In this document: positions 140-58,882 of the stretch, piece after piece
How positions within the stretch are numbered: the stretch's first letter is position 1
Layout: every line of letters starts with the position of its first letter
NCBI GenBank assembly: GCA_002269645.1
Contig: NIVC01000237.1
Location: 372,001-436,000 of the forward strand
DNA from: Macrostomum lignano
Lineage: Eukaryota
Reading direction: 5' to 3'
DNA: 64,000 nucleotides
Position numbers and translations under genes: made by a program
The notes under the pieces: generated by a model
What the model was told of the DNA's origin: nothing
Seen by the model: the letters and a program-made list of their open reading frames with translations, nothing else
Databases searched by the model: none

Positions 140-211
140 GTAAAATATCTTCAATACTTGGCCACCTGTCAATAATCTACCGGTATATACTAATTTTGCG
201 TTGTTTAGCTT

Positions 212-920
<709 letters not shown>

Positions 921-924
921 GTTA

Positions 925-3900
925 CTGTCTGTGTGTTTACTTGGACCTTTCGTCGGTTCAGTTGCCGCATTAGCTGGACCTTTCGGTTTAGGTGGACAGC
1001 GTAGGTGGACCACCGAATATTTTTGCTCCAGACAACGTTGAGTGGTTTATAAGGACCACAAAACAGAGCAATGGATGTCAGGAATGAGTGCCGCAAAGCG
1101 CAACATTCATCGGCATTCATGTTCAGAAAAAAATGCATTTCAGTTTACATGGACTTTTTGCGATGTCCACCTAAACCGGGTCTGAAAGGTCCAGCTAAAC
1201 AAAAATTGTCAATGAAAATTTCTGAATTTGTCTGTTGCAGTCTGTTTCAGTCTGTTTCAGTCTGTTGGCAATTTACCTTTTTACAACATCTTTTACGCCA
1301 AAAAAGTAATATATTTAATTTCCGTGATCTTAAATTAGGCACACACGGCTTTGTTGAGCTTTCTTCAAAGCCTTCCCACGGTTTTGTGCCCGAAAAATAT
1401 TCGAATGATGGTTCCTTTATCACGTTAGCTGCTGATAGTAGTTTAAATGGATATTGTATCCTATAGGCCTATCGACTTTCCTTCTTTTAGATTCCTTTTG
1501 ATATTTGATATTTATAAAAGTGTCGAACCACAATAAGAAATAATCCTGGTGGAGAGTTTCGGCCTTGAGAAGAAGGTTCTGCTCTCAGATCCCTGTTTAG
1601 GGGTGGGGAAGCACCAAACCAAGCTCAAAGCGAAGGTCTGATATTTTTTATTTTAGTTTAGCCTGGGTCCCACTAAACACAGTTGCACGCACATCAAATC
1701 GTCTGTTGAGGTCCATGTAAACGAAACTCGAAGCGCACAACACAGTCACACAGACTAGAGCTGCATTGGTAAAGGACTGATTTCGGAGAGGTTGGTAAAA
1801 ATCGGACCACCCTTACTGGGAATGCCAGCCAATAGGAACAGTCCAAGGGACAGACAGTCCGTCGACTAAACGAGTCAGAGAGGGGCAGAGCTATAAAAGT
1901 GAAAACCTTTGGTCTAGCTAAAACAGGCTTACATGGACCACCTAATTTCTCGGATAGACTGAAACATTCAACTGAACTGTCAATAGTCAATACACGAGAA
2001 GACACGAATGTCTCGCAGGAGATATCCCAATAACACAGAGTCCCGGAGAGGTGCAACAGTAACATATGTTACATCAAGTGGACTGGATACCTAAGGTAAG
2101 CATAAAATGAAAAGATTCAATTTAAAAGATTGACTTCCTCGCGTTCTAATTCTCTAGTAAAACCAAGCCTTTGGATTACTACGTAGCTAATAAAACAACA
2201 CACGACTTTTAGATCTAACAATACTTGGGAGCCAGTGAAAAATGTTTTCGACGACGTTTTTGAAAAATTGCATTGAAATTGCAGTAAGTACCAAAACGAA
2301 GTGTTATTTAGGATGAAAAAAATGATTAACTTTAGTAAAGAGCCTCAATAAGAACCTACTCAATCGAAATTTCAGAAATATGTTTTCCTGCCAGACCAAA
2401 AAGCAAAATCTACCAGGTAAGCAAATCGGTGCACATACAACTTAAGCTGGTCCAGCTAACCTACAGACTGTACTGACGCAACTGAGCCAGTCTGTTTAAG
2501 AGCCTTACAGATGGGAGGTGGAATTCAAGTTTAGGAGGTCCAGCTAACCTACAGACTGCACTGATGCAACTGATCCAGTCTGTTTAAGAGCCGCACAAAT
2601 GGGAGGTGGAATTCAAGTTTAGGTGGTCCAGCTAACCTACAGACTGCACTGATGCAACTGATCCAGTCTGTTTAAGAGCCGCACAAATGGGAGGTGGAAT
2701 TCAAGTTTAGGTGGTCCAGCTAACCTACAGACTGCACTGACGCAACTGATCCAGTCTGTTTTAGAGCCTCACCAATAGGAGGTGGAATTCAAGTCCAGGA
2801 GATCCAGCTAACCTACAGACTGTACTGACACCAATATGCCAGTCTGTTTCAAAGTCTCAGTAGAATATCAGTTGTAAACTGTCAATCCTGAATTCTCGTA
2901 TAAATGCCAAATTTGACAGGCCCAGTCTGGAGACGGCAAGTCAGCTTTGATGCAGACGAGTGACGCAAGCAACTCTAGCAAGATATCGACCAAGACTTTA
3001 AAGGCCAAGAGCCATTAAGTCGACTATAGGCTGACACCTCACGTCTGGACACTTCTAAGAAGTCGGCTGAGGCACCTGAGACGCTGGTCAGTCCGGTGGA
3101 CAGACGTGTTGCCTCATCGCAGTTCAGTCATAGGACGAGATTGAATCTACTGTGGTGAGCTTGCTGCAAAAGTGTTCAGATTTGGCTTATCTTATTCTAA
3201 TTGAACTGGTCCAGCTAACCTACAGACTGTACTGACGCCACAGAGCCAGTCTGTTTTAGAGCCTCACAGATGGGGTGGAATTCAAGTTTAGGAGGTCCAG
3301 CTAACCTACAGACTGCACTGACGCAACTGAGCCAGTCTGTTGAAGAGCCTCACAGATGGGAGGTGGAATTCAAGTTTAGGTGGTCCAGCTAACATACAGA
3401 CTGCACTGACACCAATATGCCAGTCTGTTTCAGTCTCAGTAGAATATCAGTTGTAAACTGTCAATCCTGAATTCTCGTATAAATGCCAAATTTGACAGGC
3501 CCAGTCTGGAGACGGCAAGTCAGCTTTGATGCAGACGAGTGACGCAAGCAACTCCAGCAAGATATCGACCAAGACTTTAAGACCAAGAGCCATTAAGTCG
3601 ACTATAGGCTGACACCTCACGTCTGGACACTTCTAAGAAGTCGGCTGAGGCACCTGAGACGCTGGTCAGTCCGGTGGACAGACGTGTTGCCTCATCGCAG
3701 TTCAGTCAAAGGACGAGATTGAATCTACTGTGGTGAGCTTGCTGCAAGAGTGTTCAGATTTGGCTTATCCTATTCTAATTGAACTGGTCCAGCTAACCTA
3801 CAGACTGTACTGACGCAACTGATCCAGTCTGTTTAAGAGCCTCACAGATGGGGTGGAATTCAAGTTTAGGAGGTCCAGCTAACCTACAGACTGCACTGAC

Positions 3901-6805
3901 GCAACTGATCCAGTCTGTTTAAGAGCCTCACAGATAAGAGGTGGAATTCAAGTTTAGGTTGTCCAGCTAACCTACAGACTGCACTGACGCAACTGAGCCA
4001 GTCTGTTGAAGAGCCTCACAGATAAGAGGTGGAATTCAAGTTTAGGTGGTCCAGCTAACCTACAGACTGTACTGACGCAACTGATCCAGTCTGTTTAAGA
4101 GCCTCACAGATGGGGTGGAATTCAAGTTTAGGAGGTCCAGCTAACCTACAGACTGCACTGACGCAACTGATCCAGTCTGTTTAAGAGCCTCACAGATAAG
4201 AGGTGGAATTCAAGTTTAGGTTGTCCAGCTAACCTACAGACTGCACTGACACCAATATGCCAGTCTGTTTCAAAGTCTCAGTAGAATATCAGTTGTAAAC
4301 TGTCAATCCTGAATTCTCATATAAATGCCAAATTTGACAGGCCCAGTCTGGAGACGGCAAGTCAGCTTTGATGCAGACGAGTGACGCAAGCAACTCCAGC
4401 AAGATATCGACCAAGACTTTAAAGGCCAAGAGCCATTAAGTCGACTATAGGCTGACACCTCACGTCTGGACACTTCTAAGAAGTCGGCTGAGGCACCTGA
4501 GACGCTGGTCAGTCCGGTGGACAGACGTGTTGCCTCATCGCAGTTTAGTCAAAGGACGAGATTGAATCTACTGTGGTGAGCTTGCTGCAAGAGTGTTCAG
4601 ATTTGGCTTATCTTATTCTAATTGAACTGGTCCAGCTAACCTACAGACTGTACTGACGCCACAGAGCCAGTCTGTTTTAGAGCCTCACAGATGGGGTGGA
4701 ATTCAAGTCCAGGAGGTCCAGCTAACCTACAGACTGCACTGACGCAACTGATCCAGTCTGTTTAAGAGCCTCACAGATAAGAGGTGGAATTCAAGTTTAG
4801 GTGGTCCAGCTAACCTACAGACTGCACTGACGCAACTGATCCAGTCTGTTTAAGAGCCTCACAGATAAGAGGTGGAATTCAAGTTTAGGAGGTCCAGCTA
4901 ACCTACAGACTGCACTGACGTAACTGAGCCAGTCTGTTTTAGAGCCTCACCAATAGGAGGTGGAATTCAAGTCCAGGAGATCCAGCTAACCTACAGACTG
5001 TACTGACACCAATATGCCAGTCTGTTTCAAAGTCTCAGTAGAATATCAGTTGTAAACTGTCAATCCTGAATTCTCATATAAATGCCAAATTTGACAGGCC
5101 CAGTCTGGAGACGGCAAGTCAGCTTTGATGCAGACGAGTGACGCAAGCAACTCTAGCAAGATATCTACCAAGACTTTAAAGGCCAAGAGCCATTAAGTCG
5201 ACTATAGGCTGACACCTCACGTCTGGACACTTCTAAGAAGTCGGCTGAGGCACCTGAGACGCTGCATGGTCAGTCCGGTGGACAGACGTGTTGCCTCATC
5301 GCAGTTCAGTCATAGGACGAGATTGAATCTACTGTGGTGAGCTTGCTGCAAGAGTGTTCAGATTTGGCTTATCTTATTCTAATTGAACTGGTCCAGCTAA
5401 CCTACAGACTGTACTGACGCCACAGAGCCAGTCTGTTTTAGAGCCTCACAGATGGGGTGGAATTCAAGTTTAGGAGGTCCAGCTAACCTACTGACTGCAC
5501 TGACGCAACTGATCCAGTCTGTTTAAGAGCCTCACAGATAAGAGGTGGAATTCAAGTCCAGGAGGTCCAGCTAACCTACAGACTGTACTGACGCCACAGA
5601 GCCAGTCTGTTTTAGAGCCTCACAGATGGGGTGGAATTCAAGTCCAGGAGGTCCAGCTAACCTACAGACTGCACTGATGCAACTGATCCAGTCTGTTTAA
5701 GAGCCTCACCAATAGGAGGTGGAATTCAAGTTCAGGTGGTCCAGCTAACCTACAGACTGCACTGACGCAACTGAGCCAGTCTGTTTTAGAGCCTCACCAA
5801 TAGGAGGTGGAATTCAAGTACAGGAGGTCCAGCTAACCTACAGACTGCACTGACACCAATATGCCAGTCTGTTTCAGTCTCAGTAGAATATCAGTTGTAA
5901 ACTGTCAATCCTTAATTCTCGTATAAATGCCAAATTTTACAGGCCCAGTCTGGAGACGGCAAGTCAGCTTTGATGCAGACGAGTGACGCAAGCAACTCCG
6001 GCAAAATGAAGACGATTTTTTGTGCTTAACCGCAAAAGTTTGTTTATGATGATATTGACTGCGACAGCTTGTGGCTTTCTGTGAGATGATTCCGCTATCC
6101 GTCGTAACATGTCTTGTCCGTCCGTTAAAACTTTTTTCATTTACAAAAATTGAGTGGAAAGTTGTTCTATTGTAATACGTGAAATTTATTAGGCAAATGT
6201 ATTTATTAATCATATCGTCGTCAATCTACTTGCCTTTTGGCACATATTTGGGACGTTAAGTGTGTTTCTTTAGGTTTATCATTATTCTAGTGAAAAACAA
6301 ATATGACTTTTTGCTATTTAAACTTTTGCTTGGCCGTTAATTTGCACTTGTAACTATTTTTCTCGGTCTAAAAATTAGTTGCATTTGATTCATTTGTTTT
6401 CAATGGGGATGATGGTTCTTGAGTCCGGCGCAAAGTAGAACTGAATGCATTATTTTCACTTTATTACATATTGTGTATTTGGGACTTCTGTCACGTGACT
6501 TTTAGTGTTGTTTCTCGTGCTTAACAGTACTGGGTCGATAATAATCCCAGTACTCTGCTAAATAAATGATGGTCCACCTAAACGGTGTCTTTTTGAAGGT
6601 CCACCTAAAACAGGTCCGGGCTGGTCCAGCTATCCCAGTTGAAAGTGACATGCAGTTTCCACGAGATGGCTAATCTGCAGGCTAAACTGAAAGACAACCC
6701 ACGCTAACTTTTCGTGTAGAGACAAAAGACACCGGTTTTATAAGGAAACTAGGTGGTCCACCTAATGCATTAACAAAACTCTGGTCCCGCTAAACACACA
6801 GACAG
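925..6805. mobile_element. Non-autonomous TIR-bounded DNA element (~5.9 kb) inserted in a (TCTG)n tract
   Basis: Left end 925-947 CTGTCTGTGTGTTTACTTGGACC; right end 6783-6805 reverse-complements to CTGTCTGTGTGTTTAGCGGGACC (20/23 identical). Subterminal GGTCCA(C/G)CTAA-type motifs are inverted at 971-1011 and direct at 6571-6765. (TCTG)n lies on both flanks; TA at 923-924 and 6809-6810. No transposase ORF. Confidence 0.7.
2449..5996 (+). repeat. Higher-order satellite of ~87-bp (S) and ~405-bp (L) monomers sharing a ~45-bp head
   Basis: Units start (G)GTCCAGCTAACCTACAGACTG at about 2449, 2537, 2625, 2713 (S), 2801 (L), 3208, 3294 (S), 3382 (L), 3786-4134 (5 S), 4222 (L), 4629-4891 (4 S), 4979 (L), 5390-5738 (5 S), 5826 (partial L). 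Confidence 0.95.
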
Positions 6806-6810
6806 CGGTA

Positions 6811-6912
<102 letters not shown>

Positions 6913-6938
6913 CAACCCTAGACCCGCCCTCTGTCCAG

Positions 6939-9900
6939 GTGCTCACCAAGGACTCCGTCACTGTCAGCGTGGATTACCGAGTCAACAATGCCACAGTCTC
7001 GGTGGCAAACGTGGAGAACGCGCACCACTCCACCAGGCTGCTGGCCCAAACCACCCTGAGGAACGTGCTGGGCACCAAGAACCTGGCCGAGATTCTGTCC
7101 GAACGGGAGAGCATCAGCAACTCCATGCAGGTGAGCAGCCATGGCTACCACCAGCTCCACTTTGCCTACAAGCCGTAGCAGCCAGGCAGACTCTCCATCT
7201 CTCCCTGACTCTCTCCATCTCTCCCTGACTCTCTCCATTTCTCCCTGACTCTCTCCATCTCTCCCTGATTCTCTCCATCTCTCCCTGACTCTCTCCATCT
7301 CTCCCTGACTCTCTCCATTTCTCCCTGACTCTCTCCATCTCTCCCTGATTCTCTCCATCTCTCCCTGACTCTCTCCATCTCTCCCTGATTCTCTCCATCT
7401 CTCCCTGACTCTCTCCATCCCCTTCGACTCTCTCCATCTCTCCCTGACTCTCTCCATCTCTCCCTGACTCTCTCCATCTCTCCCTGATTCTCTCCATCTC
7501 TCCCTGACTCTCTCCATCCCCTTCGACTCTCTCCATCTCTCCCTGACTCTCTCCATCTCTCCCTGACTCTCTCCATCTCTCCCTGACTCTCTCCATCTCT
7601 CCCTGACTCTCTCCATCCTTCCCTGACTCTCTCCATCTCTCCCTGACTCTCTTCATCTCTCCCTGACTCTCTTCATCTCTCCCTGACTCTCTTCATCTCT
7701 CTCTGACTCTTTGCATCTCTCCCTGACTCTCTCCATCTCTCCCTGATTTCTCTCCTCGATAGTAAGTTCAGTGTTACCGATCGCAACCTCAATCTGATTT
7801 CAGACTGCCCTTGACGAAGCCACCGTGGCCTGGGGTATCAAAGTCGAGCGAGTTGAAATGTAAGTAAACATTTGTTACTACTTACTGTATAAGTAGCGTG
7901 TTGATAAGCAAAAAAACTCAAGTTAAAATCCTGAGCATTATTAATCATTGCAGCAAGGATGTCCGCCTGCCGGTTCAGCTGCAGAGGGCCATGGCTGCCG
8001 AAGCCGAGGCCGACAGGGAGGCCCGCGCCAAGGTTCGGGGAGTGAATGAGTGACAGACTGATGGAGTGAATGAGTGACAGGCTGATGGAATGAAAGATTT
8101 GTGGAGTGACAGATCGATGAGGTAACTTTTTTGCAGAGGGAAAATTGACAGTGTAATGACAGTGTATCTGTGATAGAGTGACAGATTGACGAAGTGATAG
8201 ATTCACGGAGTTACAGATTGATAAAGTTACAGATTGATAAGTGACAGATTGACGGAGTGACAGATTGACGGAATGATAGATTGACGGAGTGACAGATTGA
8301 CGGAGTGACAGATTGACGTAGTGACAGATTGACGTAGTGACAGATTGATGGAGTGACAGATTGACGGAGTGACAGATTGACGGAGTGACAGATTGACGGA
8401 GTGACAGATTGATAAAGTTACAGATTGACGGAGTGACAGATTGATAAAGTTACAGATTGACGGAGTGACAGATTGACGTAGTGACAGATTGATGGAGTGA
8501 CAGATTGATGGAGTGACAGATTGACGGAGTGACAGATTGACGGAGTGACAGATTGACGGAGTGACAGATTGACGGAGTGACAGATTGACGTAGTGACAGA
8601 TTAACGGAGTGACAGATTGACGTAGTGACAGATTGACGTAGTGACAGATTGACGGAGTGACAGATTGATAAAGTTACAGATTGACGTAGTGACAGATTAA
8701 CGGAGTGACAGATTGACGTAGTGACAGATTGACGGAGTGACAGATTGACGGAGTGACAGATTGACGGAGTGACAGATTGATAAAGTTACAGATTGACGTA
8801 GTGACAGATTAACGGAGTGACAGATTGACGTAGTGACAGATTGACGGAGTGACAGATTGACGGAGTGACAGATTGACGGAGTGACAGATTGATAAAGTTA
8901 CAGATTGACGTAGTGACAGATTGACGGAGTGACAGATTGATAAAGTTACAGATTGACGTAGTGACAGATTGACGGAGTGACAGATTGACGTAGTGACAGA
9001 TTGATGGAGTGACAGATTGATAAAGTTACAGATTGACGTAGTGACAGATTGACGTAGTGACAGATTGACGTAGTGACAGATTGACGGAGTGACAGATTGA
9101 CGTAGTGACAGATTGATGGAGTGACAGATTGACGTAGTGACAGATTGATGGAGTGACAGATTGACGTAGTGACAGATTGATGGAGTGACAGATTGACGGA
9201 GTGACAGATTGATAAAGTTACAGATTGACGTAGTGACAGATTAACGGAGTGACAGATTGACGTAGTGACAGATTGACGTAGTGACAGATTGACGTAGTGA
9301 CAGATTGATGGAGTGACAGATTGACGTAGTGACAGATTGACGGAGTGACAGATTGACGGAGTGACAGATTGATGGAGTGACAGATTGACGGAGTGACAGA
9401 TTGATGGAGTGACAGATTGACGTAGTGACAGATTGATGGAGTGACAGATTGATGGAGTGACAGATTGACGGAGTGACAGATTGACGGAGTGACAGATTGA
9501 TAAAGTTACAGATTGACGTAGTGACAGATTGACGGAGTGACAGATTGATGGAGTGACAGATTGACGGAGTGACAGATTGACGGAGTGACAGATTGACGGA
9601 GTGACAGATTGATGGAGTGACAGATTGACGGAGTGACAGATTGATAAAGTTACAGATTGACGTAGTGACAGATTAACGGAGTGACAGATTGACGTAGTGA
9701 CAGATTGACGGAGTGACAGATTGACGGAGTGACAGATTGACGGAGTGACAGATTGATGGAGTGACAGATTGACGGAGTGACAGATTGATGGAGTGACAGA
9801 TTGACGGAGTGACAGATTGACGTAGTGACAGATTGACGGAGTGACAGATTGACGGAGTGACAGATTGACGGAATGACAGACACAGGCGAGCGCTACGCCA

Positions 9901-10132
9901 CCTCGCCCCCCGTCATTCGCAGGTGATAGCGGCCGAGGGTGAGCAGCGCGCCTCGGTGGCACTGAAAGAGGCCAGTGACGTCATCAGCTCGTCGCCAACG
10001 GCCCTGCAGCTGCGCTACCTGCAGACTCTGACGGGCATCTCTGCCGAGAAGAATTCCACTATCATCTTCCCGCTGCCCATCGACCTGATGGCGACCTTCA
10101 TGAACACCGCCAAAGATAAGAAAACTGACTGA
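6939..10132 (+). CDS. Stomatin / band-7 (SPFH) family protein, mec-2/STOM-like; four 3' exons only
   Basis: Exons 6939-7130, 7804-7859, 7954-8032, 9923-10132 with GT-AG sites and consistent phases give VLTKDSVTVSVD-YRVNNATVSVANVENAHHSTRLLAQTTLRNVLGTKNLAEILSERESISNSMQ|TALDEATVAWGIKVERVEI|KDVRLPVQLQRAMAAEAEADREARAK|VIAAEGEQRAS...LQLRYLQTL...KNSTIIFPLP, hallmark stomatin sequence. Confidence 0.95.
7190..7755 (+). repeat. 20-bp intronic minisatellite (CTCTCCATCTCTCCCTGACT)
   Basis: Direct reading, inside stomatin intron 7131-7803. Confidence 0.95.
8160..9880 (+). repeat. 16-bp intronic minisatellite (GTGACAGATTGACGGA and variants)
   Basis: Direct reading, inside stomatin intron 8033-9922. Confidence 0.97.
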
Positions 10133-12628: not shown

Positions 12629-15600
12629 CAGTCGGCCCATTATTTTTTCGTCGCTCTCCTTCTTGGGCTTGCATTGCGAGCTGCCCCACCACTTGCTCAC
12701 CTTGATGCCGTAGTAATTCAGGTGCGAGTCGATGCAGGAGGCCATCTTGGTGAGGCACGGCAGGAACACCTTCGGCGAGTCCGCGCACTTGCGGTCTTCG
12801 TTCTTCGGCTTGCCTTGGCAAATTCGAAATCCGCTTGGAGAGTTCGGCTTCATGCCCGACGGGTAGAACACCTCCGTGCCGTGATGGTACGGACCCGACT
12901 TCTGGTCCGGCTGGCACCGCTCCAGGGGGCCCCGGCACAGCGGCAGGTGCACCACCGGGTCCTGTGGGGAAACAGTTGAGCTGAGCTGCCAATAACTGCA
13001 GTCACCCCTCACTCTACTGATCTCTCCCTGACTCTCCACGTCTCTCCGTGGGTCTATTTCTTGATTATTAAAATTCCTGCTGACTCTGACTTTTGACTTC
13101 CATCGTCTCCCTCTGACCCTTCGTGGACTCCTAATCCCTCATCCCTCAGCCCTCATCCCTCATCCCTCAGCCCTCATCCCTCAGCCCTCATCCCTCATCC
13201 CTCATCCCTCAGCCCTCATCCCTCAGCCCTCATCCCTCATCCCTCATCCCTCATCCCTCAGCCCTCATCCCTCAGCCCTCATCCCTCATCCCTCATCCCT
13301 CATCCATCAGCCCTCAGCCCTCAGCCGTCAGCTCTCATCCCTCATCCCTCATCCCTCATCCCTCAGCCCTCATCCCTCATCCCTCAGCCCTCATCCCTCA
13401 TCCCTCAGCCCTCATCCCTCAGCCCTCATCCCTCATCCCTCATCCCTCATCCCTCAGCCCTCATCCCTCAGCCCTCATCCCTCATCCCTCATCCATCATC
13501 CCTCATCCCTCAGCCCTCATCCTTCAGCCCTCATCCCTCATCCCTCATCCCTCAGCCCTCATCCCTCATCCCTCAGCCCTCATCCCTCATCCCTCATCCC
13601 TCATCCCTCAGCCCTCATCCCTCATCCCTCATCCCTCAGCCCTCATCCCTCATCCCTCAGCCCTCAGCCCTCATCCCTCATCCCTCATCCCTCAGCCCTC
13701 ATCCCTCATCCCTCAGCCCTCATCCCTCATCCCTCAGCCCTCATCCCTCATCCCTCAGCCCTCATCCCTCATCCCTCAGCCCTCATCCCTCAGCCCTCAT
13801 CCCTCAGCCCTCATCCCTCATCCCTCATCCCTCAGCCCTCATCCCTCAGCCCTCATCCCTCATCCCTCATCCCTCAGCCCTCACTCACCCGCCCGTTGAC
13901 CACCCGCCAGCTGCTGCCGCCGGCCATCAGTTTGTCGAACGCCGCCGAAAACGTCGCGTCGCCCACCCGGGGCTCCCCAAAGGTGAACAGCTGAGGCCGC
14001 AGCCCCTTGGCCGCCAGCTGGACTGCCGTCAGGGCCGCCATCGCCCCGCCAAGCGAGTGGCCCGTCACCAGAATCGCGTCTCTCGGATTCGCCGAACGAA
14101 TTTGGGCAAACGCCGGCTCCAGTTTAGACCAGACCGCCCGCTGAGCCATGCTGAAGTACGCCTGCACCCGGCCTCCGACAGGGGACGGCACCGGCGGCGT
14201 TTTGAGCACGCTGAGCAGCTCGACAATCAGCTGCCCGTCCTGGTTGGTGCCGCGGAAGACGATCTGGAGAAGGACGGTGGGGGATGCCAGTACAAGACAT
14301 GTTTTAGCCAGTACAAGACCCACAAACAGACTGGTACAAGACTCACACACAGACCAGTACAAGACCCAAACACAAAGCAGTACAAGACCCACACAAAGAC
14401 CAGTACAAGACCCACACAAAGACCAGTACAAGACCCACACATAAACCAGTACAAGACTCACACACAGACCAGTACAAGACTCACACACAGACCAGTACAA
14501 GACCCACACAAAGACCAGTACAAGACTCACACAAAGACCAGTACAATACTCACACATAAACCAGTACAAGACTCACACACAGACCAGTACAAGACTCACA
14601 CACAGACCAGTACAATACTCACACAAAGACCAGTACAAGACTCACACAAAGACCAGTACAAGACCCACACATAAACCAGTACAAGACTCACACACAGACC
14701 AGTACAAGACTCACAAACAGACCGGTACAAGACTCACACACAAACCAGTACAAGACTCACACACAGACCAGTACAAGACCCACACATAAACCAGTACAAG
14801 ACTCACACACAGACCAGTACAAGACTCACACACAGACCAGTACAAGACCCAAACACAAAGCAGTACAAGACCCACACAAAGACCAGTACAAGACCCACAC
14901 ACAGACCAGTACAAGACCCAAACACAGACCAGTACAAGACCCACACAAAGACCAGTACAAGACTCACACAAAGACCAGTACAAGACTCACACAAAGACCA
15001 GTACAAGACCCACACATAAACCAGTACAAGACTCACACACAGACCAGTACAAGACTCACACACAGACCAGTACAAGACTCACATATAAACCAGTACAAGA
15101 CTCACACACAGACCAGTACAAGACTCACACACAGACCAGTACAAGACTCACACACAGACCAGTACAATACTCACACACAGACCAGTACAAGACTCACACA
15201 CAGACCAGTACAAGACTCACACACAGACCAGTACAATACTCACACAAAGATCAGTACAAGACTCACACACAGACCAGTACAATACTCACACAAAGATCAG
15301 TACAAGCCTCATACTCAGACCAGTACAAGATTCATACTCAGACTAGTACAAGACCAACACACACAGTACAAGACCATACACACGCCAGTACAAGACCAAC
15401 ACACACAGTACAGGAACAACACACACACTACAGGATCAACACACACAAGTACAGGACCAACACACACCAGTACAAGACCCACACCAGTACAAGGCAGTAA
15501 AGAACAGTAAAGGTCATCTTTCTCCAGCATCCGCCGCTCCGAATACCATGGTGATGCGTTTTCTCGGCAGCCGGGCCACAAAGCCGGACCAGGTGCCGCC

Positions 15601-39377: not shown

Positions 39378-39795
<418 letters not shown>

Positions 39796-43276: not shown

Positions 43277-48853
<5,577 letters not shown>

Positions 48854-55390: not shown

Positions 55391-58300
55391 TCACTCGGCT
55401 TTCTCAGCCTCCCCCGCAGTCCAGTCCCTCAGGCACTGCCATTGCTGCCCCGGCCGCAGCAGCTGGCGCACATTGATATTAACCCGAGTCAGCCGCAGGT
55501 AGCGCCGCATCAGGCAGCACTGCTCAGTCTGTGAGCAGGCCGCAGCCCCACTTTCGGCATCGCTTCGATCCTCGTCGCAAAAGCAGCAGTAGTCGGGTCC
55601 GGCCGCACGGCCAGAAGTGCCGGTAAACACCCTGACCACAGAGTGGTAAAACTGCCTGGACTGGCCGGTCATCACGATCACGTCTCCGTGTCCGAGCAGC
55701 ACCGGGATTGGCGCCAGAGACTCCGGACAGAGCCGGTCGGGACCGGCCAGCAGGTAAGCGGCGGATAGGCCGACGCTCAGGCTGACCAGGGGAGCCGCCA
55801 TGTAGGGCTCGGCGGTGTCCAGGTGGAAGCACATGCTGTGGCCGGGGTGGTAGTAGTTCACAATGCCCGCCTGGGCTGCGTACCGCCGCCCTGTCCAGGC
55901 ACCTGGGGGATTCGTATAAGCGAGATTGACTACTGAAGAGTAGCAAGGAGAGAATTTGAAGCGAATGGGAGCCGGCAATTCACTGCAAGCCATTTGGGTT
56001 TGGGGCTTAGGTAAGGGTTTAGATTAGGATTTAGGTTAGGGTTTAGGCTGCGGTTTAGGTTAGGGCTAGGTTTAAGTTAGGGTTTAGGTTAGGGTCGGCA
56101 GTCAATAGTGCAGACCCTAAGCGAATTTCTTACGTCTACAACGCGTGCAATACAATTAGTACTTGCTATTTGGGGGGGGGTACTGGCTACATGTATGGGA
56201 TTCTTTCTATCCAGGGATTCTTGCTATCTGCAGGATGCTTGCTATCTGGCTGGATGCTTGCTATCTGGCTGGATGCTTCAACAATATCTGGGGGATGCTT
56301 GCTATCTGCAGATGCTTGCTATCTGCAGATGCTTGCTATCTGGGGTGATGCTTGCTATCTGCAGATGCTTGCTATCTGGGGTGATGCTTGCTATCTGCAG
56401 ATGCTTGCTATCTGGGGAGATGCTTGCTATCTGCAGATGCTTGCTGTCTGGGGTGATGCTTGCTATCTGCAGATGCTTGCTGTCTGGGGTGATGCTTGCT
56501 ATCTGCAGATGCTTGCTATCTGCGGTTGCTTACTTTTGGGGGGGGGGGGTTGCTTGCTATCTGGGGGGATGCTTGCTATCTGCGGTTGCTTACTTTTGGG
56601 GGAGGGGGGGTTGCTTGCTATCTGGGGGATGCTTGCTGTCTTGGGAATATTTTTCAATTAAGAGGGAGCTATATTTTGTTGTCTGTTAATTTTAGAGAAA
56701 AAGTGATTCATAGCAAAACACCTTTGTCCGTAACAATTTTACACGAATCAGGTGATTTTTAGAAGTGAAGAAGGAATTGGTTCTTAAGAAAATGTGCAGT
56801 TTTAATTGTTTTCCATGAACTACTTTTGCTCCTTGCTTATTGGGCGCCCCGAAGGGGGGCGGCACTAGATTGCTAGTTAGCATACTAATACTTAAACAGA
56901 ACTTCAACAGTATCCATGTACACAGATGAGATCCTTGCTCAGGCTCAGAAATGAGTAAGAAGTACAAACAACTCAGAAACCGGACCAGAGTTCGTAGCTC
57001 ATTTCTAGAAACGCATCTATAAGCCCACAGAAATTATTCGCAGGGATTCCAGACTAGGAAAGCAAATTATTTGAAAATCCTAGTGGCTTTTCAAGTACGT
57101 AGTTTATTGGGAATTTACCAATTAAGAATTGACTTGCAGGTAAAGAGTCGTTGCAGGTAAAATAGGAAAGAAGTGACTCAATTATACGATTCTAAAACGA
57201 GATGTCTTTTAGTCTACTTGAGATAGTAGAAAGTTAAGCGCCAATACGACTCTTGGATGATGACTTTTTTGCTACTCTTTTACGATTCTGCAACTCACGT
57301 GATGCGCTCGTGACTCAGCAGTCGCCTCAGAGTCGCTAGAGATTCTCCAGTGAGTTGTTTGCAACTTGACTCTTTAGCGATTCTTGTCAGGGTAACGTAC
57401 TCTCTCAATGGGGTACTTGAAAATCAATTAGGATTTCCCAATTAGAATCCACCCAGAAGTCAATTGGGATTTCCCAATTAGAATCGAACCAGAAATCAAT
57501 TGGGATTTCCCAATTAATTAGAATCCACCCGAAAATCAATTGGGATTTCCCAATTAGAATCCACCCGAAAATCAATTGGGATTTCCCAATTAGAATCCAC
57601 CCAGAAATCAATTGGGATTTCCCAATTAGAATCCACCCAGAAATCAATTGGGATTTCCCAATTAGAATCGAACCAGAAATCAATTGGGATTTCCCAATTA
57701 GAATCGAACCAGAAATCAATTGGGATTTCCCAATTAGAATCGAACCAGAAATCAATTGGGATTTCCCAGTAGAATCGACCCGTAAATCAATTGGGATTTC
57801 CCAGTAGAATCGACCCGAAAATCAATTGGGATTTCTCGATTAGAATCGACCCGAAAATCAATTGGGATTTCCCAATTAGAATCGAACCAGAAATCAATTG
57901 AAATTTCCCAATTAGAATCGACCCGAAAATCAATTGTGATTCCCCAGTAGAATCGACCCAGAAATCAGTTGGGATTTCCCAATAGAGTCGCTCACCAGTG
58001 AGGTCGCAGAGCTGAGCTGCCAGGTCAGCCAGACAGCCGGGAATCTGCGGGGGCTCCCAGCTGGCGTCGGCAGCCGGCGGCACTCTGTATCGCCTCGCCG
58101 TCCAGTTGTACTGCGCACCCAGCGTTGTCCAGCGCAGCTTGTACAACCAGCTGGAGGCGAACAGCCGATCGTCTGGTTCGTCAACAAATTTGATTGCGTC
58201 ATCGAATAGCAGGGCCGGCCTGTCAGGCTCGATGTCCAAGTTGGTCCGGCGCCGCTCGCAGTCCAAGTCGTCGTCGACGGCACCGGCGTCGGCTGGACGA

Positions 58301-58882
58301 CCCCGGCCGGGCCAGCGGCGAACAGCGTCCGCGGCCAGGTGGGTTGGAAGGTCGGCGGCGCCCGGACGGGCCGGCGGCAGAAACGGATTGGGCAGGCAGT
58401 AGAAACCGTTGGGGTACTGCAGCACCTGCGGATGCGGGAGCAGAGGGAGAGCGGCTTTGCTCTCTTCTTTTAGGGGAATATAAGAAACACGACGATTTCC
58501 AAACAGGTTTTGAGATTTCAGTCTACTTTTTGACGAATATTTTCAAGACTGGGAAAGAAAAAATGTTATTCATTATTTTTATAAACTTCTCGGGTTTGTC
58601 GATTTAAAATTTAGCAGGCTTTATTAAAAAATAAATTAAAAAATGCAACGCGCTACTTATAGTAAGTTAAACAACAAAAATCTCTCCAACCTCAATAGAT
58701 TCCTTCAGCGAAGCGTCAGACGACTGCGGCCGCCGCACCTGGAACCTGACGGCCTTGGTGGCGGCCGCCCGTTCTGCGCAGTCCCGAAACTGCGCGTAGT
58801 TCATCGCGCGGTAACGCTTGAAGGCCAACTTCAAAGGGTCGCCACCAGCATCGTTACACTGACCAGCCTCCTCCATCATCAT
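55391..58882 (-). CDS. ALKBH1: AlkB homolog 1 (Fe/2-oxoglutarate nucleic-acid dioxygenase), ~377 aa, 3 exons
   Basis: Exons 58882-58691, 58425-57996, 55902-55391 with matched phases: GDPLKLAFKRYR|VLQYPNGFYCLPNPFLP...KLRWTTLGAQYNWTARRY...|AQAGIVNYY...CFHLD (HxD)...PLVSLSVG..AAYLLAG...GDVIVMTGQSRQFYHSV (His)...RVNINVRQ. Confidence 0.93.
55990..56096 (+). repeat. Degenerate TTAGGG / TTTAGG telomere-like tract
   Basis: TTAGGTAAGGGTTTAGATTAGGATTTAGGTTAGGGTTTAGG...GTTAGGGTTTAGGTTAGGG in ALKBH1 intron 2. Confidence 0.7.
56210..56640 (+). repeat. GATGCTTGCTATCTG-based intronic repeat
   Basis: Direct reading. Confidence 0.9.
57420..57985 (+). repeat. 36-bp intronic minisatellite with a palindromic core AATTGGGATTTCCCAATT
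   Basis: Unit GAAATCAATTGGGATTTCCCAATTAGAATCGAACCA, ~16 copies in ALKBH1 intron 2. Confidence 0.95.

What the first reader, a model, noticed from the sequence alone, without database searches (positions are those of the whole stretch)
925..6805. TIR-bounded element whose terminal motif has been amplified into an internal two-monomer satellite
Seen: 23-bp imperfect TIRs (20/23) enclose 5.9 kb inserted between two (TCTG)n tracts. The TIR core GGTCC-N-(C/G)CTAA recurs ~35 times: inverted in the left subterminal copies (971-1011), direct everywhere else (1165, 1188, 1666, 6571, 6598, 6623, 6755), and at the head of all 25 satellite monomers. A third, right-TIR-like sequence (GGTCCCACTAAACAC, ~1666) would define a nested ~760-bp MITE. 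Inference: a foldback-type non-autonomous DNA transposon that targets TCTG microsatellites (its own ends begin CTGTCTG) and carries an array of candidate transposase-binding sites, i.e. a transposon caught turning into a satellite. The superfamily cannot be named from the sequence.
Basis: partly seen in the sequence, partly recalled or inferred. Interest (0 to 1): 0.7.

Follow-up and report, generated by a model that had tools for sequence, protein, structure and literature searches.

The report
Transposon-like insert carrying an internal satellite
A 5.9-kb non-coding insert with inverted ends sits in a TCTG microsatellite next to a stomatin-like exon; 60% of it is a tandem array whose units start with a copy of its own end sequence, a known kind of transposon-to-satellite structure whose mobility could not be tested.

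Summary
Positions 925-947 and 6783-6805 are 20/23 inverted repeats lying where a (TCTG)n tract is interrupted. The inverted homology extends to about 56 nt, with two motif copies per end. GGTCCNSCTAA occurs 27 times exactly (0.23 expected), only inside the element: inverted in the first 130 bp, direct elsewhere. It heads all 25 array units (20 of 86/88 bp, 5 of about 407 bp). The unit head resembles the whole right terminus over about 24 nt.

The element has no detectable coding capacity.

Three points remain untested or weak:
- Mobility: no other copy in the window, in 596 Gbp of prokaryote genomes or in viral contigs. One metagenome locus shares the terminal 23-mer.
- TSD and superfamily: any TSD is hidden in the microsatellite (2, 6 or 10 bp fit).
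- TCTG targeting: it rests on one insertion, and the simple repeat may instead belong to the TIR tips.

"Foldback" fits only the left 280 bp. 41% of the window is tandem arrays, so in-situ amplification is unremarkable here. Verdict: new member of a known kind (Tetris, Xstir, miDNA4, DTC84), moderate-to-low interest.

The parts
212..919 (+). Left (TCTG)n microsatellite, about 181 units with TTTG/CCTG variants. It is either the left half of the target array or an expansion of the simple-repeat tip of the left TIR.
   Evidence: TRF row 212-936, period 4, 92% matches; sequence read.
920..924 (.). 5-nt junction TGTTA between the perfect microsatellite and the 23-nt TIR. Its mirror partner is 6806-6810 (CGGTA). 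The four mismatches between the two are all transitions, so these may be the diverged outermost TIR bases.
   Evidence: Direct reading; alignment.
925..947 (+). Left terminal inverted repeat, CTGTCTGTGTGTTTACTTGGACC. The outer 15 nt are identical to the right end, and the inner part is an inverted, degenerate motif copy.
925..983 (+). Extended left terminal homology (TIR plus second motif block GCATTAGCTGGACC), collinear with the reverse complement of 6750-6805.
   Evidence: Inverted pair I2 956-980 / 6755-6779; gapped alignment with 46 matches.
937..1057 (-). Cluster of five inverted motif copies (937, 970, 988, 1001, 1047), consensus GGTCCASCTAAAC. These are candidate transposase-binding sites of the left arm.
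970..1201 (+). Left-arm hairpin. 970-1001 pairs with 1161-1198, which carries direct motif copies at 1164 and 1188. 1184-1201 (GAAAGGTCCAGCTAAACA) is a right-end-like sequence that would close a roughly 277-bp foldback unit with the left TIR.
   Evidence: Inverted pairs I4, I11 and I15; DNA fold -54.6 kcal/mol, z = -5.7, 0 of 200 shuffles as good.
1230..1267 (+). Short tandem (GTCTGTTGCA)3.8 containing CAGTCTGTT three times. The same 9-mer occurs once in every array unit, at a similar distance downstream of the motif. 1184-1270 is therefore the likely paralogue or progenitor of the array monomer.
   Evidence: TRF. CAGTCTGTT occurs 28 times on the + strand, 25 in the array plus 1238/1248/1258, and only once elsewhere in 64 kb.
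1662..1686 (+). With the left TIR it would delimit a 762-bp unit.
1687..2448 (+). Unique non-coding internal region with scattered degenerate motif copies (1710, 1911, and the 1929/1935 palindromic pair).
   Evidence: six-frame Pfam scan negative.
2449..6007 (+). Two-monomer tandem array: 20 short units (86/88 bp) and 5 long units (404-411 bp, the last truncated), arranged in five higher-order blocks. Every unit starts with GGTCCAGCTAACCTACAGACTG (variant first bases GATCC or TGTCC in four units, one further single-base substitution in each of two others), which resembles the right terminus. Most junctions into a following unit form the near-palindrome TTAGGTGGTCCAGCTAA.
   Evidence: long units 96.0-99.3% identical; head against terminus, 6 of 2000 shuffles; alignment A1.
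6008..6560 (+). Unique AT-rich non-coding internal region between the array and the right arm.
   Evidence: Array end mapped; six-frame Pfam negative; no similarity to the rest of the window.
6571..6765 (+). Right subterminal motif copies (6571, 6598, 6623, and 6749/6755 as the palindrome TAGGTGGTCCACCTAA), in the mirror order of the left-arm copies. A local hairpin pairs 6571-6594 with 6726-6765.
   Evidence: left against reverse-complemented right, z = 4.1; z = -2.8.
6783..6805 (+). Right terminal inverted repeat, GGTCCCGCTAAACACACAGACAG.
6806..6810 (.). 5-nt junction CGGTA. Together with CAGACAG on one side and TGTCTG on the other it forms a small hairpin at the boundary.
   Evidence: 3' terminal hairpin in the fold.
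6811..6912 (+). Right (TGTC)25.5 microsatellite, 100% pure, in the same orientation as the left array. Joining 919 to 6811 gives a continuous array with two extra bases (TG).
   Evidence: empty-site join.
6926..7130 (+). Context: a Band_7/stomatin-like exon 14 bp downstream of the right microsatellite. The element therefore lies in the intron (or upstream region) directly preceding this exon.
   Evidence: Pfam PF01145, E = 6.4e-07; further exons of the same gene located; homologues at 82-86% identity.

Best explanation
The segment about 920/925 to 6805/6810 is a relic or low-copy non-autonomous class II (TIR, cut-and-paste) DNA transposon of unknown superfamily. It lies in non-coding DNA just upstream of a stomatin-like exon and interrupts a (TCTG)n tract.

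Proposed mechanism:
- Its ends are imperfect inverted repeats of about 56 nt, each with two copies of a 11-13-bp motif (GGTCCASCTAAAC). More copies lie subterminally, inverted on the left and direct on the right, some as palindromic pairs (TTAGGTGGWCCASCTAA).
- By analogy with subterminal repeats of other TIR transposons, these would be binding sites for a transposase supplied in trans.
- An internal segment beginning with an end-like 24-mer (the kind seen at 1184-1270 and 1662-1690) was amplified by unequal crossing-over or replication slippage. It first formed 86/88-bp units, then roughly 0.6-0.85-kb higher-order blocks of [2-5 short + 1 long unit].
- The last rounds were recent (long units 96-99% identical) and probably occurred in situ.

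Shown: the sequence architecture, the lack of coding capacity, and the relatedness of monomer heads to the terminus.
Inferred: past mobility, protein binding, the order of events, and in-situ growth.
For: - TIRs lie exactly at the two borders of the interruption of the microsatellite: 20/23, with the outer 15 nt identical and unique in the window.
- Collinear inverted homology extends to about 56 nt. The order of subterminal motif types is mirrored on the two arms (z = 4.1).
- The motif is confined to the element: 27 exact matches against 0.23 expected. 6 of these lie outside the array in 2.3 kb, where about 0.01 is expected.
- No coding capacity.
- Monomer heads resemble the right terminus. 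A second monomer motif, CAGTCTGTT, recurs only at 1238-1258.
- Long units are 96-99.3% identical, against 87% for the TIRs.
- Joining the flanks restores the microsatellite with a 2-base surplus, compatible with a TSD of 2, 6 or 10 bp.
- One independent eukaryote-like metagenome locus carries GGTCCAACTAAACACACAGACAG, which is 22/23 identical to the left end (reverse complement) and 21/23 to the right end. It sits at the edge of a small inverted-repeat structure. The same 23-mer pattern has 0 hits in 596 Gbp of prokaryote genomes.
- Literature precedent exists for every component: Tetris and Galileo (PMC4079207), Xstir and miDNA4 (PMC12628747), DTC84 (PMC3879986).
Against: - Only one copy is visible. 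There is nothing related elsewhere in the 64-kb window, in viral contigs or in prokaryote genomes.
- The five metagenome contigs are one locus, and their match is partly low-complexity sequence.
- No TSD can be demonstrated and no transposase partner is known.
- 98% of the element is in one orientation, so the 'left arm' is only about 130 bp.
- The outer 7 nt of each TIR are the microsatellite motif itself, so the exact ends are uncertain.
- The host genome forms tandem arrays at a very high rate (41% of the window). The array therefore says little about transposon biology.
Confidence: 0.6

Rival explanations
1. Same transposon, but the TCTG tracts are not a target. The family carries (CTGT)n-type simple repeats as the outer tips of its TIRs ('hitchhiking' microsatellites). 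The 725-bp left array is an expansion of the left tip. The right tip shrank to (CAGA)2, and the adjacent (TGTC)25 arose by fold-back or template switching, or is independent.
For: - Both TIRs end in CTGTCTG / CAGACAG, in inverted orientation.
- The left array continues the left tip in the same phase and orientation.
- In the metagenome locus the 125-nt core is flanked by roughly 50-nt inverted degenerate (TGTC/TGTA)n and (CAGA/GA)n arms, 76-78% complementary. An insertion into a microsatellite cannot produce that arrangement.
- CAGACAG-CGGTA-TGTCTG at the right border forms a hairpin.
- TE-borne GTCY-type microsatellites are documented (PMC7492417; Coates et al. 2011, cited in PMC9659126).
Against: - The right array is in the same orientation as the left one and starts 5 nt from the element end, as expected for a split pre-existing array.
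- Joining the flanks gives an almost in-phase array.
- TCTG arrays with unrelated flanks occur elsewhere in the window (39380-39794 and 44926-45482). They therefore exist independently of this element.
Confidence: 0.2
2. Not a mobile element. It is a locally generated structure in a hyper-repetitive intron: a satellite array with degenerate flanking monomers (which explains the motif copies in the arms), plus a small inversion or fold-back duplication at the left edge that mimics a TIR.
For: - There is a single copy in all accessible data.
- No TSD can be shown.
- 41% of the window is tandem arrays.
- Motif orientation is uniform over 98% of the element.
- Only about 130 bp are inverted, and they sit next to a strong local hairpin.
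Against: - The 15-nt perfect and roughly 56-nt collinear inverted homology sits exactly at both junctions with the microsatellite.
- The arms between motif copies are not recognisably degenerate monomers: alignments of the arms against the S and L units give z of 3.6 at most, driven by the motif.
- About 1.8 kb of unique sequence (1270-2448 and 6008-6560) is enclosed.
- A near-identical terminal 23-mer occurs in an unrelated metagenome locus.
Confidence: 0.12
3. A Helentron-derived non-autonomous element (HINE / DINE-1-like, rolling-circle). Such elements typically combine a GTCY-type microsatellite in the left module, central satellite-like tandem repeats, and a right module with a subTIR plus palindrome.
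For: - (TCTG)n equals (GTCT)n, which is a GTCY-type microsatellite, and it lies directly to the left.
- There is a central tandem array with palindromes at unit junctions.
- HINE features are as described in PMC7492417.
Against: - No subTIR or complementary IR lies upstream of the left microsatellite that pairs with the right side. The only match is one AT-rich 9-mer, which is at chance level.
- The significant inverted repeats lie inside the microsatellite, not outside it.
- A second microsatellite lies on the right.
- The flanks are TCTG, not the TT or oligo-T insertion site.
- The segment between microsatellite and array is 1.5 kb, against 10-500 bp in HINEs.
Confidence: 0.05

Closest known systems
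Tetris (foldback-like non-autonomous DNA transposon of Drosophila virilis) and Galileo (P superfamily)
   Same: - Non-coding and TIR-bounded.
- Tandem repeats inside the element share sequence with the outer TIR domain. In Tetris this is a 37-bp stretch at about 80%; here it is a roughly 24-nt end-like head at about 80%.
- Repeats carrying extra transposase-binding sites are reported for Galileo.
- Only a few structurally complete copies and no autonomous partner were found for Tetris (PMC4079207).
   Different: - In Tetris and Galileo the tandem repeats lie within long TIRs on both arms, so the element folds back. Here the array is central, in a single orientation, and inverted homology is only about 56 nt.
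- Tetris repeats also form stand-alone kb-size arrays. That was not testable here.
- Tetris has demonstrable 8-10-bp TSDs.
Tandem-repeat-containing MITEs that seed satellites: Xstir and miDNA4 (Xenopus)
   Same: An internal segment of a TIR element is amplified into an array between intact arms. The model holds that long arrays eventually outlive the decaying ends (PMC12628747).
   Different: - Those families are known from hundreds to thousands of copies, and miDNA4 has an assigned superfamily (Tc1/mariner).
- Here there is one copy of unknown superfamily, and the array has two monomer types in higher-order blocks.
DTC84 / pearl / Cg_HINE (bivalve tandem-repeat elements, Helentron-related) and DINE-1
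   Same: Modular layout: flank, microsatellite (GTCY type), tandem core repeats, flank. A palindrome lies near each monomer junction (PMC3879986; PMC7492417).
   Different: - The defining HINE substructures were tested here and not met: a 5' subTIR plus adjacent IR upstream of the microsatellite, a 3' subTIR plus hairpin, insertion at TT, and no TSD.
- Here the inverted repeats are terminal and lie inside the two microsatellite tracts.
Microsatellite-targeting DNA transposons: MuTAnT (MULE, Medicago), Micron (rice), TAFT (maize)
   Same: The element is flanked on both sides by the same microsatellite. The arms are built from repeated modules with foldback potential. The TSD is obscured by the repetitive flank (PMC4486113).
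   Different: - Those families target (TA)n, and the preference is shown on many copies (218 for MuTAnT) with an autonomous partner.
- Here the tract is (TCTG)n, there is a single insertion, and a rival reading has the simple repeat belonging to the TIR tip.

Membership tests
Non-autonomous class II TIR transposon (generic) | Terminal inverted repeats at the boundaries of the inserted segment | tested here: met
   20/23 TIR, unique in the window, extending to about 56 nt of collinear inverted homology.
Non-autonomous class II TIR transposon (generic) | Target-site duplication of fixed length flanking the TIRs | tested here: inconclusive
   The flanks are a period-4 microsatellite. With ends at 920/6810, a TSD of 2, 6 or 10 bp fits and 3, 4 or 8 bp does not. 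With other end choices, 8 bp or an imperfect TTA/GTA also fit.
Non-autonomous class II TIR transposon (generic) | Multiple dispersed copies sharing the ends, and empty sites | not testable with these tools
   The source genome is not searchable. There are no further copies in the window, in viral contigs or in prokaryote genomes. One metagenome locus shares the terminal 23-mer.
Non-autonomous class II TIR transposon (generic) | No transposase gene of its own; an autonomous partner with the same TIRs exists | tested here: inconclusive
   Absence of coding capacity is shown. The existence of a partner could not be tested.
Foldback elements (FB, Tetris, Galileo-like) | Long TIRs, often made of tandem subrepeats on both arms, forming most of the element | tested here: not met
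   Inverted homology is about 56 nt. The array is central and unidirectional, and motif copies are inverted only in 937-1057. Only the left 280 bp folds strongly, and the right arm folds weakly.
Foldback elements (FB, Tetris, Galileo-like) | TSD of 8-10 bp (Mutator-like or P-like) | tested here: inconclusive
   10 bp (or 8 bp with shifted ends) is compatible but not demonstrable inside the microsatellite.
HINE / Helentron-derived (DINE-1, Cg_HINE, DTC84) | 5' subTIR with adjacent complementary IR upstream of a GTCY-type microsatellite, matched by a 3' subTIR followed by a palindrome | tested here: not met
   No inverted repeat of 10 nt or more links 60-211 to 6000-6960. The only match is one AT-rich 9-mer. 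Criteria are from PMC7492417.
HINE / Helentron-derived (DINE-1, Cg_HINE, DTC84) | Central array of satellite-like tandem repeats | tested here: met
HINE / Helentron-derived (DINE-1, Cg_HINE, DTC84) | Insertion at TT or oligo-T without a TSD | tested here: not met
   The flanks are (TCTG)n on both sides.
Microsatellite-targeting DNA transposons (Micron, MuTAnT, TAFT-like) | The majority of copies are flanked on both sides by the same microsatellite | not testable with these tools
   This one copy is flanked by same-orientation TCTG tracts. The two other TCTG arrays in the window are unoccupied. TCTG arrays make up 2.8% of the window.
TE-derived satellite DNA (Xstir, miDNA4, TIR-220 type) | Monomers derived from the element's own sequence | tested here: met
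   The monomer head matches the right terminus (6 of 2000 shuffles). Motif plus CAGTCTGTT are shared with 1184-1270.
TE-derived satellite DNA (Xstir, miDNA4, TIR-220 type) | The same monomers also occur as stand-alone arrays outside the element | not testable with these tools
   None in the remaining 58 kb of the window. The monomer 22-mer is absent from viral and prokaryote collections.

The most novel reading that the evidence does not exclude
A DNA-transposon family shared by distantly related invertebrates, whose TIR tips are themselves (CTGT)n simple repeats. It would integrate into, or seed, (TCTG)n microsatellites through terminal homology. Its internal arrays would be strings of complete right-end mimics that act as alternative ends or as a transposase sink. 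That would link microsatellite birth, satellite birth and transposition in one element.
Probability: 0.08. Interest if true: 0.6.

Novelty: new member of a known kind. Interest (0 to 1): 0.3.

Why it matters
If genomic copies confirm mobility, this element is a clean, small example of an early TE-to-satellite transition. The monomer still carries a recognisable copy of the transposon terminus, and two monomer types are already organised in higher-order blocks. The link with a TCTG microsatellite could bear on two questions. One is whether some DNA transposons use microsatellites as safe havens. The other is whether they instead generate them from their own tips. Both ideas, and the TE-to-satellite route itself, are already documented in insects, molluscs, frogs and plants. 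The value is therefore that of an additional case in an under-studied invertebrate genome, not of a new principle. It also matters for annotation: the insert lies about 120 bp upstream of a stomatin-like exon.

Tried and rejected
1. Exact look-up of three element ORFs and five host ORFs in the 15-billion-protein collection: none present.
2. Homology search with an ALKBH1-like host ORF to identify the organism: no hits.
3. A 150-aa stomatin-like query assembled from four exons gave 82-86% hits in crustaceans, insects and annelids alike. Only 'protostome invertebrate' can be stated. No orthologous genomic locus long enough to test for an empty site was found.
4. phmmer of the 131-aa ORF spanning the left arm against 1.84 billion representatives: 0 hits.
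5. Collection scans:
   - Monomer 22-mer in viral and prokaryote contigs: 0 hits.
   - Terminal pattern in viral and prokaryote contigs: 0 hits.
   - Terminal pattern in JGI metagenomes: 5 contigs that are one locus.
6. Literature search for the motif, TIR and monomer strings: only unrelated primers.
7. Rfam and tRNA scans of the window: nothing, so there is no SINE or tRNA origin.
8. HINE/Helentron model: tested and rejected.
9. The idea that each short monomer is a right-end/left-end junction (tandem mini-MITEs or a circle junction): the right-end-like head is significant, but the left-end-like part is not (216-462 of 2000 shuffles). Rejected as unsupported.
10. The idea that the sequence before the array (2066-2448) is a diverged tail of the long unit: no (z = -0.6).
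11. The short-monomer dimer has no unusual folding energy (z = 0.18), despite an 8-bp stem in each unit.
12. Shared flanks among the four TCTG arrays of the window, which would make them TE-borne: none seen.
13. A resemblance of the palindromic site to part of the Drosophila P-element 31-bp TIR (...AGGTGGTCCCG...) is recalled from memory only. It is in the opposite orientation relative to the terminus and was not tested. It is a lead, not evidence.

Full report
CONTEXT

The window is eukaryotic and extraordinarily rich in tandem repeats. TRF arrays cover 41.8% of the 64 kb (40.7% outside the element). There are about 45 separate arrays, mostly with periods of 4-44 nt.

The region of interest lies directly upstream of an exon encoding part of a Band_7/stomatin-like protein (6926-7130; Pfam PF01145). 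Further exons of the same gene follow on the + strand.

The assembled 150-aa fragment is 82-86% identical to proteins of crustaceans, insects and annelids alike. I can therefore only say that the source is a protostome invertebrate. Neither this genome nor a close relative is reachable through the protein collections.

OBSERVATION CHECK

TIRs. The 23-nt TIRs (925-947 / 6783-6805, 20/23) are the best inverted pair in the region and the only matches to that pattern in the window. They sit exactly where a (TCTG)n tract is interrupted: (TCTG)181 on the left and a pure (TGTC)25 on the right, in the same orientation.

The inverted homology is longer than reported. A second block (956-980 / 6755-6779) is collinear with the TIR, giving about 56 nt with 46 matches and two motif copies per end. 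The order of subterminal motif variants is also mirrored on the two arms: one AGCTGGACC type followed by two AGGTGGACC types.

Motif. GGTCCNSCTAA occurs 27 times exactly against 0.23 expected, exclusively between 970 and 6793. Six of these lie outside the array. With one mismatch allowed there are 53 hits in the element, about 37 of them primary sites.

Array. It consists of exactly 25 motif-headed units: 20 short (86/88 bp) and 5 long (404-411 bp, the last cut at about 6007). They are arranged [25 protein letters not shown].

WHAT THE TOOLS ADD

1. The element is non-coding. There is no ORF of 60 aa or more across 2065-5905. There is no Pfam signal in the three longest ORFs, nor in six-frame translations of all non-array parts and the long unit. 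There is no relative of the longest ORF among 1.84 billion representative proteins.

2. The monomer head is not just the 11-nt core. It resembles the entire right terminus: TGGTCCCGCTAAACACACAGACAGC against TGGTCCAGCT-AACCTACAGACTGC, with 6 of 2000 shuffles reaching that score.

3. A second monomer signature, CAGTCTGTT, occurs once per unit. Outside the array it occurs only at 1238-1258, about 50 nt downstream of the motif copy at 1188. The array monomer is therefore a paralogue of the inner left-arm segment 1184-1270.

4. Most junctions into a following unit form the near-palindrome TTAGGTGGTCCAGCTAA. The same palindromic double site occurs in the arms, at 6749-6765 and 1929-1945.

5. Long units are 96.0-99.3% identical, while the TIRs are 87% identical. 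The last amplification rounds are therefore young and probably took place in situ.

6. The left arm (970-1201) is a strong hairpin (z = -5.7). The right arm is weaker (z = -2.8). The monomer dimer folds no better than shuffles.

IS IT MOBILE?

This is the weak point. The element has no similarity to the other 58 kb of the window.

- The monomer 22-mer is absent from IMG/VR and from 596 Gbp of prokaryote genomes.
- The terminal 23-mer pattern is absent from viral contigs and prokaryote genomes.
- The terminal pattern hit five JGI metagenome contigs. These are one locus in two or three haplotypes.

At that locus GGTCCAACTAAACACACAGACAG closes a 125-nt core. It is 22/23 identical to the reverse complement of the window's left end. 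The core has a second GGTCCAAC copy and an inverted GTCCCAC. It is flanked by roughly 50-nt inverted, degenerate (TGTC/TGTA)n and (CAGA/GA)n arms.

This is suggestive of a related small inverted-repeat element in another eukaryote. However, it is a single independent observation and is partly low-complexity sequence.

ENDS AND TSD

Joining 919 to 6811 gives a continuous (TCTG)n with a surplus TG. With ends at 920/6810, a TSD of 2, 6 or 10 bp is compatible. Other end choices allow 8 bp, or an imperfect TTA/GTA.

The five bases outside each 23-nt TIR (TGTTA / CGGTA) differ from perfect inverted symmetry only by transitions. They may therefore be diverged terminal bases. The same difficulty in defining TSDs was reported for the TA-microsatellite-targeting MuTAnT elements (PMC4486113). 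No superfamily can be assigned.

TARGETING VERSUS TIP MICROSATELLITES

Three observations favour insertion into a pre-existing array:
- The tracts on both sides are in the same orientation.
- The flanks join almost in phase.
- TCTG arrays with unrelated flanks exist elsewhere in the window.

A preference cannot be inferred from one event, though. TCTG arrays make up 2.8% of the window and tandem arrays 41%.

The rival reading is that the family carries (CTGT)n at its TIR tips. Three observations support it:
- The inverted CTGTCTG/CAGACAG tips.
- The inverted simple-repeat arms at the metagenome locus.
- The hairpin CAGACAG-CGGTA-TGTCTG at the right border.

OTHER MODELS

A Helentron/HINE reading was attractive. 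Those elements combine a GTCY-type microsatellite, central tandem repeats and junction palindromes (PMC7492417; PMC3879986). The defining subTIR/IR upstream of the microsatellite and a matching 3' subTIR are absent, and the flanks are not TT.

A purely local origin (array plus small inversion) cannot be excluded. It is disfavoured by two points: the placement of the perfect 15-nt inverted match at both microsatellite junctions, and the 1.8 kb of enclosed unique sequence.

COMPARISON AND VERDICT

Every component has precedent:
- Tandem repeats derived from TIR sequence, and repeats carrying additional transposase-binding sites (Tetris and Galileo; PMC4079207).
- Internal MITE repeats growing into satellites (Xstir and miDNA4; PMC12628747).
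- Microsatellite-flanked DNA transposons (MuTAnT, Micron, TAFT).

The element fails the structural definition of a classical foldback element, because its array is central and unidirectional. It also fails the definition of a HINE.

I file it as a probable non-autonomous TIR transposon with an internally amplified, end-derived two-monomer array: a new member of a known kind. Confidence in the transposon reading is about 0.6. Confidence in specific TCTG targeting is about 0.3. Interest is about 0.3.

No step had to be referred.

Noticed in passing
window 1-64000: 41.8% of the window lies in tandem arrays. There are about 45 separate micro- and minisatellites, mostly with periods of 4-44 nt, many hundreds of bp to 2 kb long and mostly within introns. 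This is an unusually array-prone genome.
   Followed up: partly
window 6926-7130, ~7800-7860, ~7950-8040, ~9920-10040 (+): Exons of a Band_7/stomatin (MEC-2-like) gene, separated by introns filled with 16-28-bp minisatellites. The first exon reads ...SVDYRV..., lacking four residues (AVVY, from memory of other stomatins) that are usually present. Best database identity is 86%; named hits at 82-84% span crustaceans, insects and annelids.
   Followed up: partly
window 55391-55993 (-) and 57787-58425 (-): Two ORFs look like the C- and N-terminal parts of an ALKBH1-type 2OG-Fe(II) dioxygenase (the first matches PF13532, E = 2e-20). The word-indexed search found no homologue at E <= 1e-5, so the protein is quite divergent.
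   Followed up: partly
window 43655-44701 (-): ORF with Snail/Scratch-like C2H2 zinc fingers and long Q, A and P runs. A 22-bp minisatellite (43773-44047) lies inside the same open frame and is probably intronic read-through.
   Followed up: no
window 13874-14569 (-): Class 3 lipase domain ORF (PF01764, E = 2.7e-25), adjacent to 14/21-bp and 23-bp minisatellites.
   Followed up: no
window 39380-39794 (+) and 44926-45482 (-): Two further long (TCTG)n arrays (104 and 138 units) have flanks unrelated to each other and to the element. TCTG-class arrays total 1.8 kb (2.8%) of the window.
   Followed up: yes
L005 539-783 (same locus in L001-L004): JGI metagenome contigs (Ga0056114, Ga0056129, Ga0056130, Ga0209680, Ga0209787) carry a 125-nt core ending in GGTCCAACTAAACACACAGACAG. 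The core is flanked by roughly 50-nt inverted degenerate (TGTC/TGTA)n and (CAGA/GA)n arms. By eye, the neighbouring sequence looks like an exon of a WD-repeat protein with splice sites, so this is probably host eukaryote DNA. The contigs diverge abruptly upstream of L005 230 and downstream of 2110, which suggests indel or TE polymorphism between haplotypes.
   Followed up: partly
window 920-924 vs 6806-6810: The five bases just outside the 23-nt TIRs are not complementary, but all four mismatches are transitions (G/A, T/C, T/C, A/G). They may be diverged terminal bases of a 28-nt TIR.
   Followed up: partly
window array units, e.g. 3886-3917: Each short and long unit contains an 8-bp inverted repeat, ACAGACTG ... 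CAGTCTGT, with a 17-nt loop (15-17 nt across units). It resembles the outer part of the TIRs (ACAGACAG / CTGTCTGT). The resemblance of the second half to the left end was not statistically significant.
   Followed up: yes
window 1885-2100 and 2410-2425: Inside the element's unique region there is a TATAAAAG box, a short ATG-initiated ORF (2008-2094) and two consensus-like 5' splice sites (AAG|GTAAGC at 2095/2096 and CAG|GTAAGC near 2417). These could be remnants of a former gene or a captured fragment. There is no protein-family match.
   Followed up: no
window 198-211: Immediately upstream of the left microsatellite, GTTGTTTAGCTTTC resembles the left TIR with the GGACC core deleted (GTGTTTAC[TTGGAC]CTTTC). 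This is probably chance.
   Followed up: no
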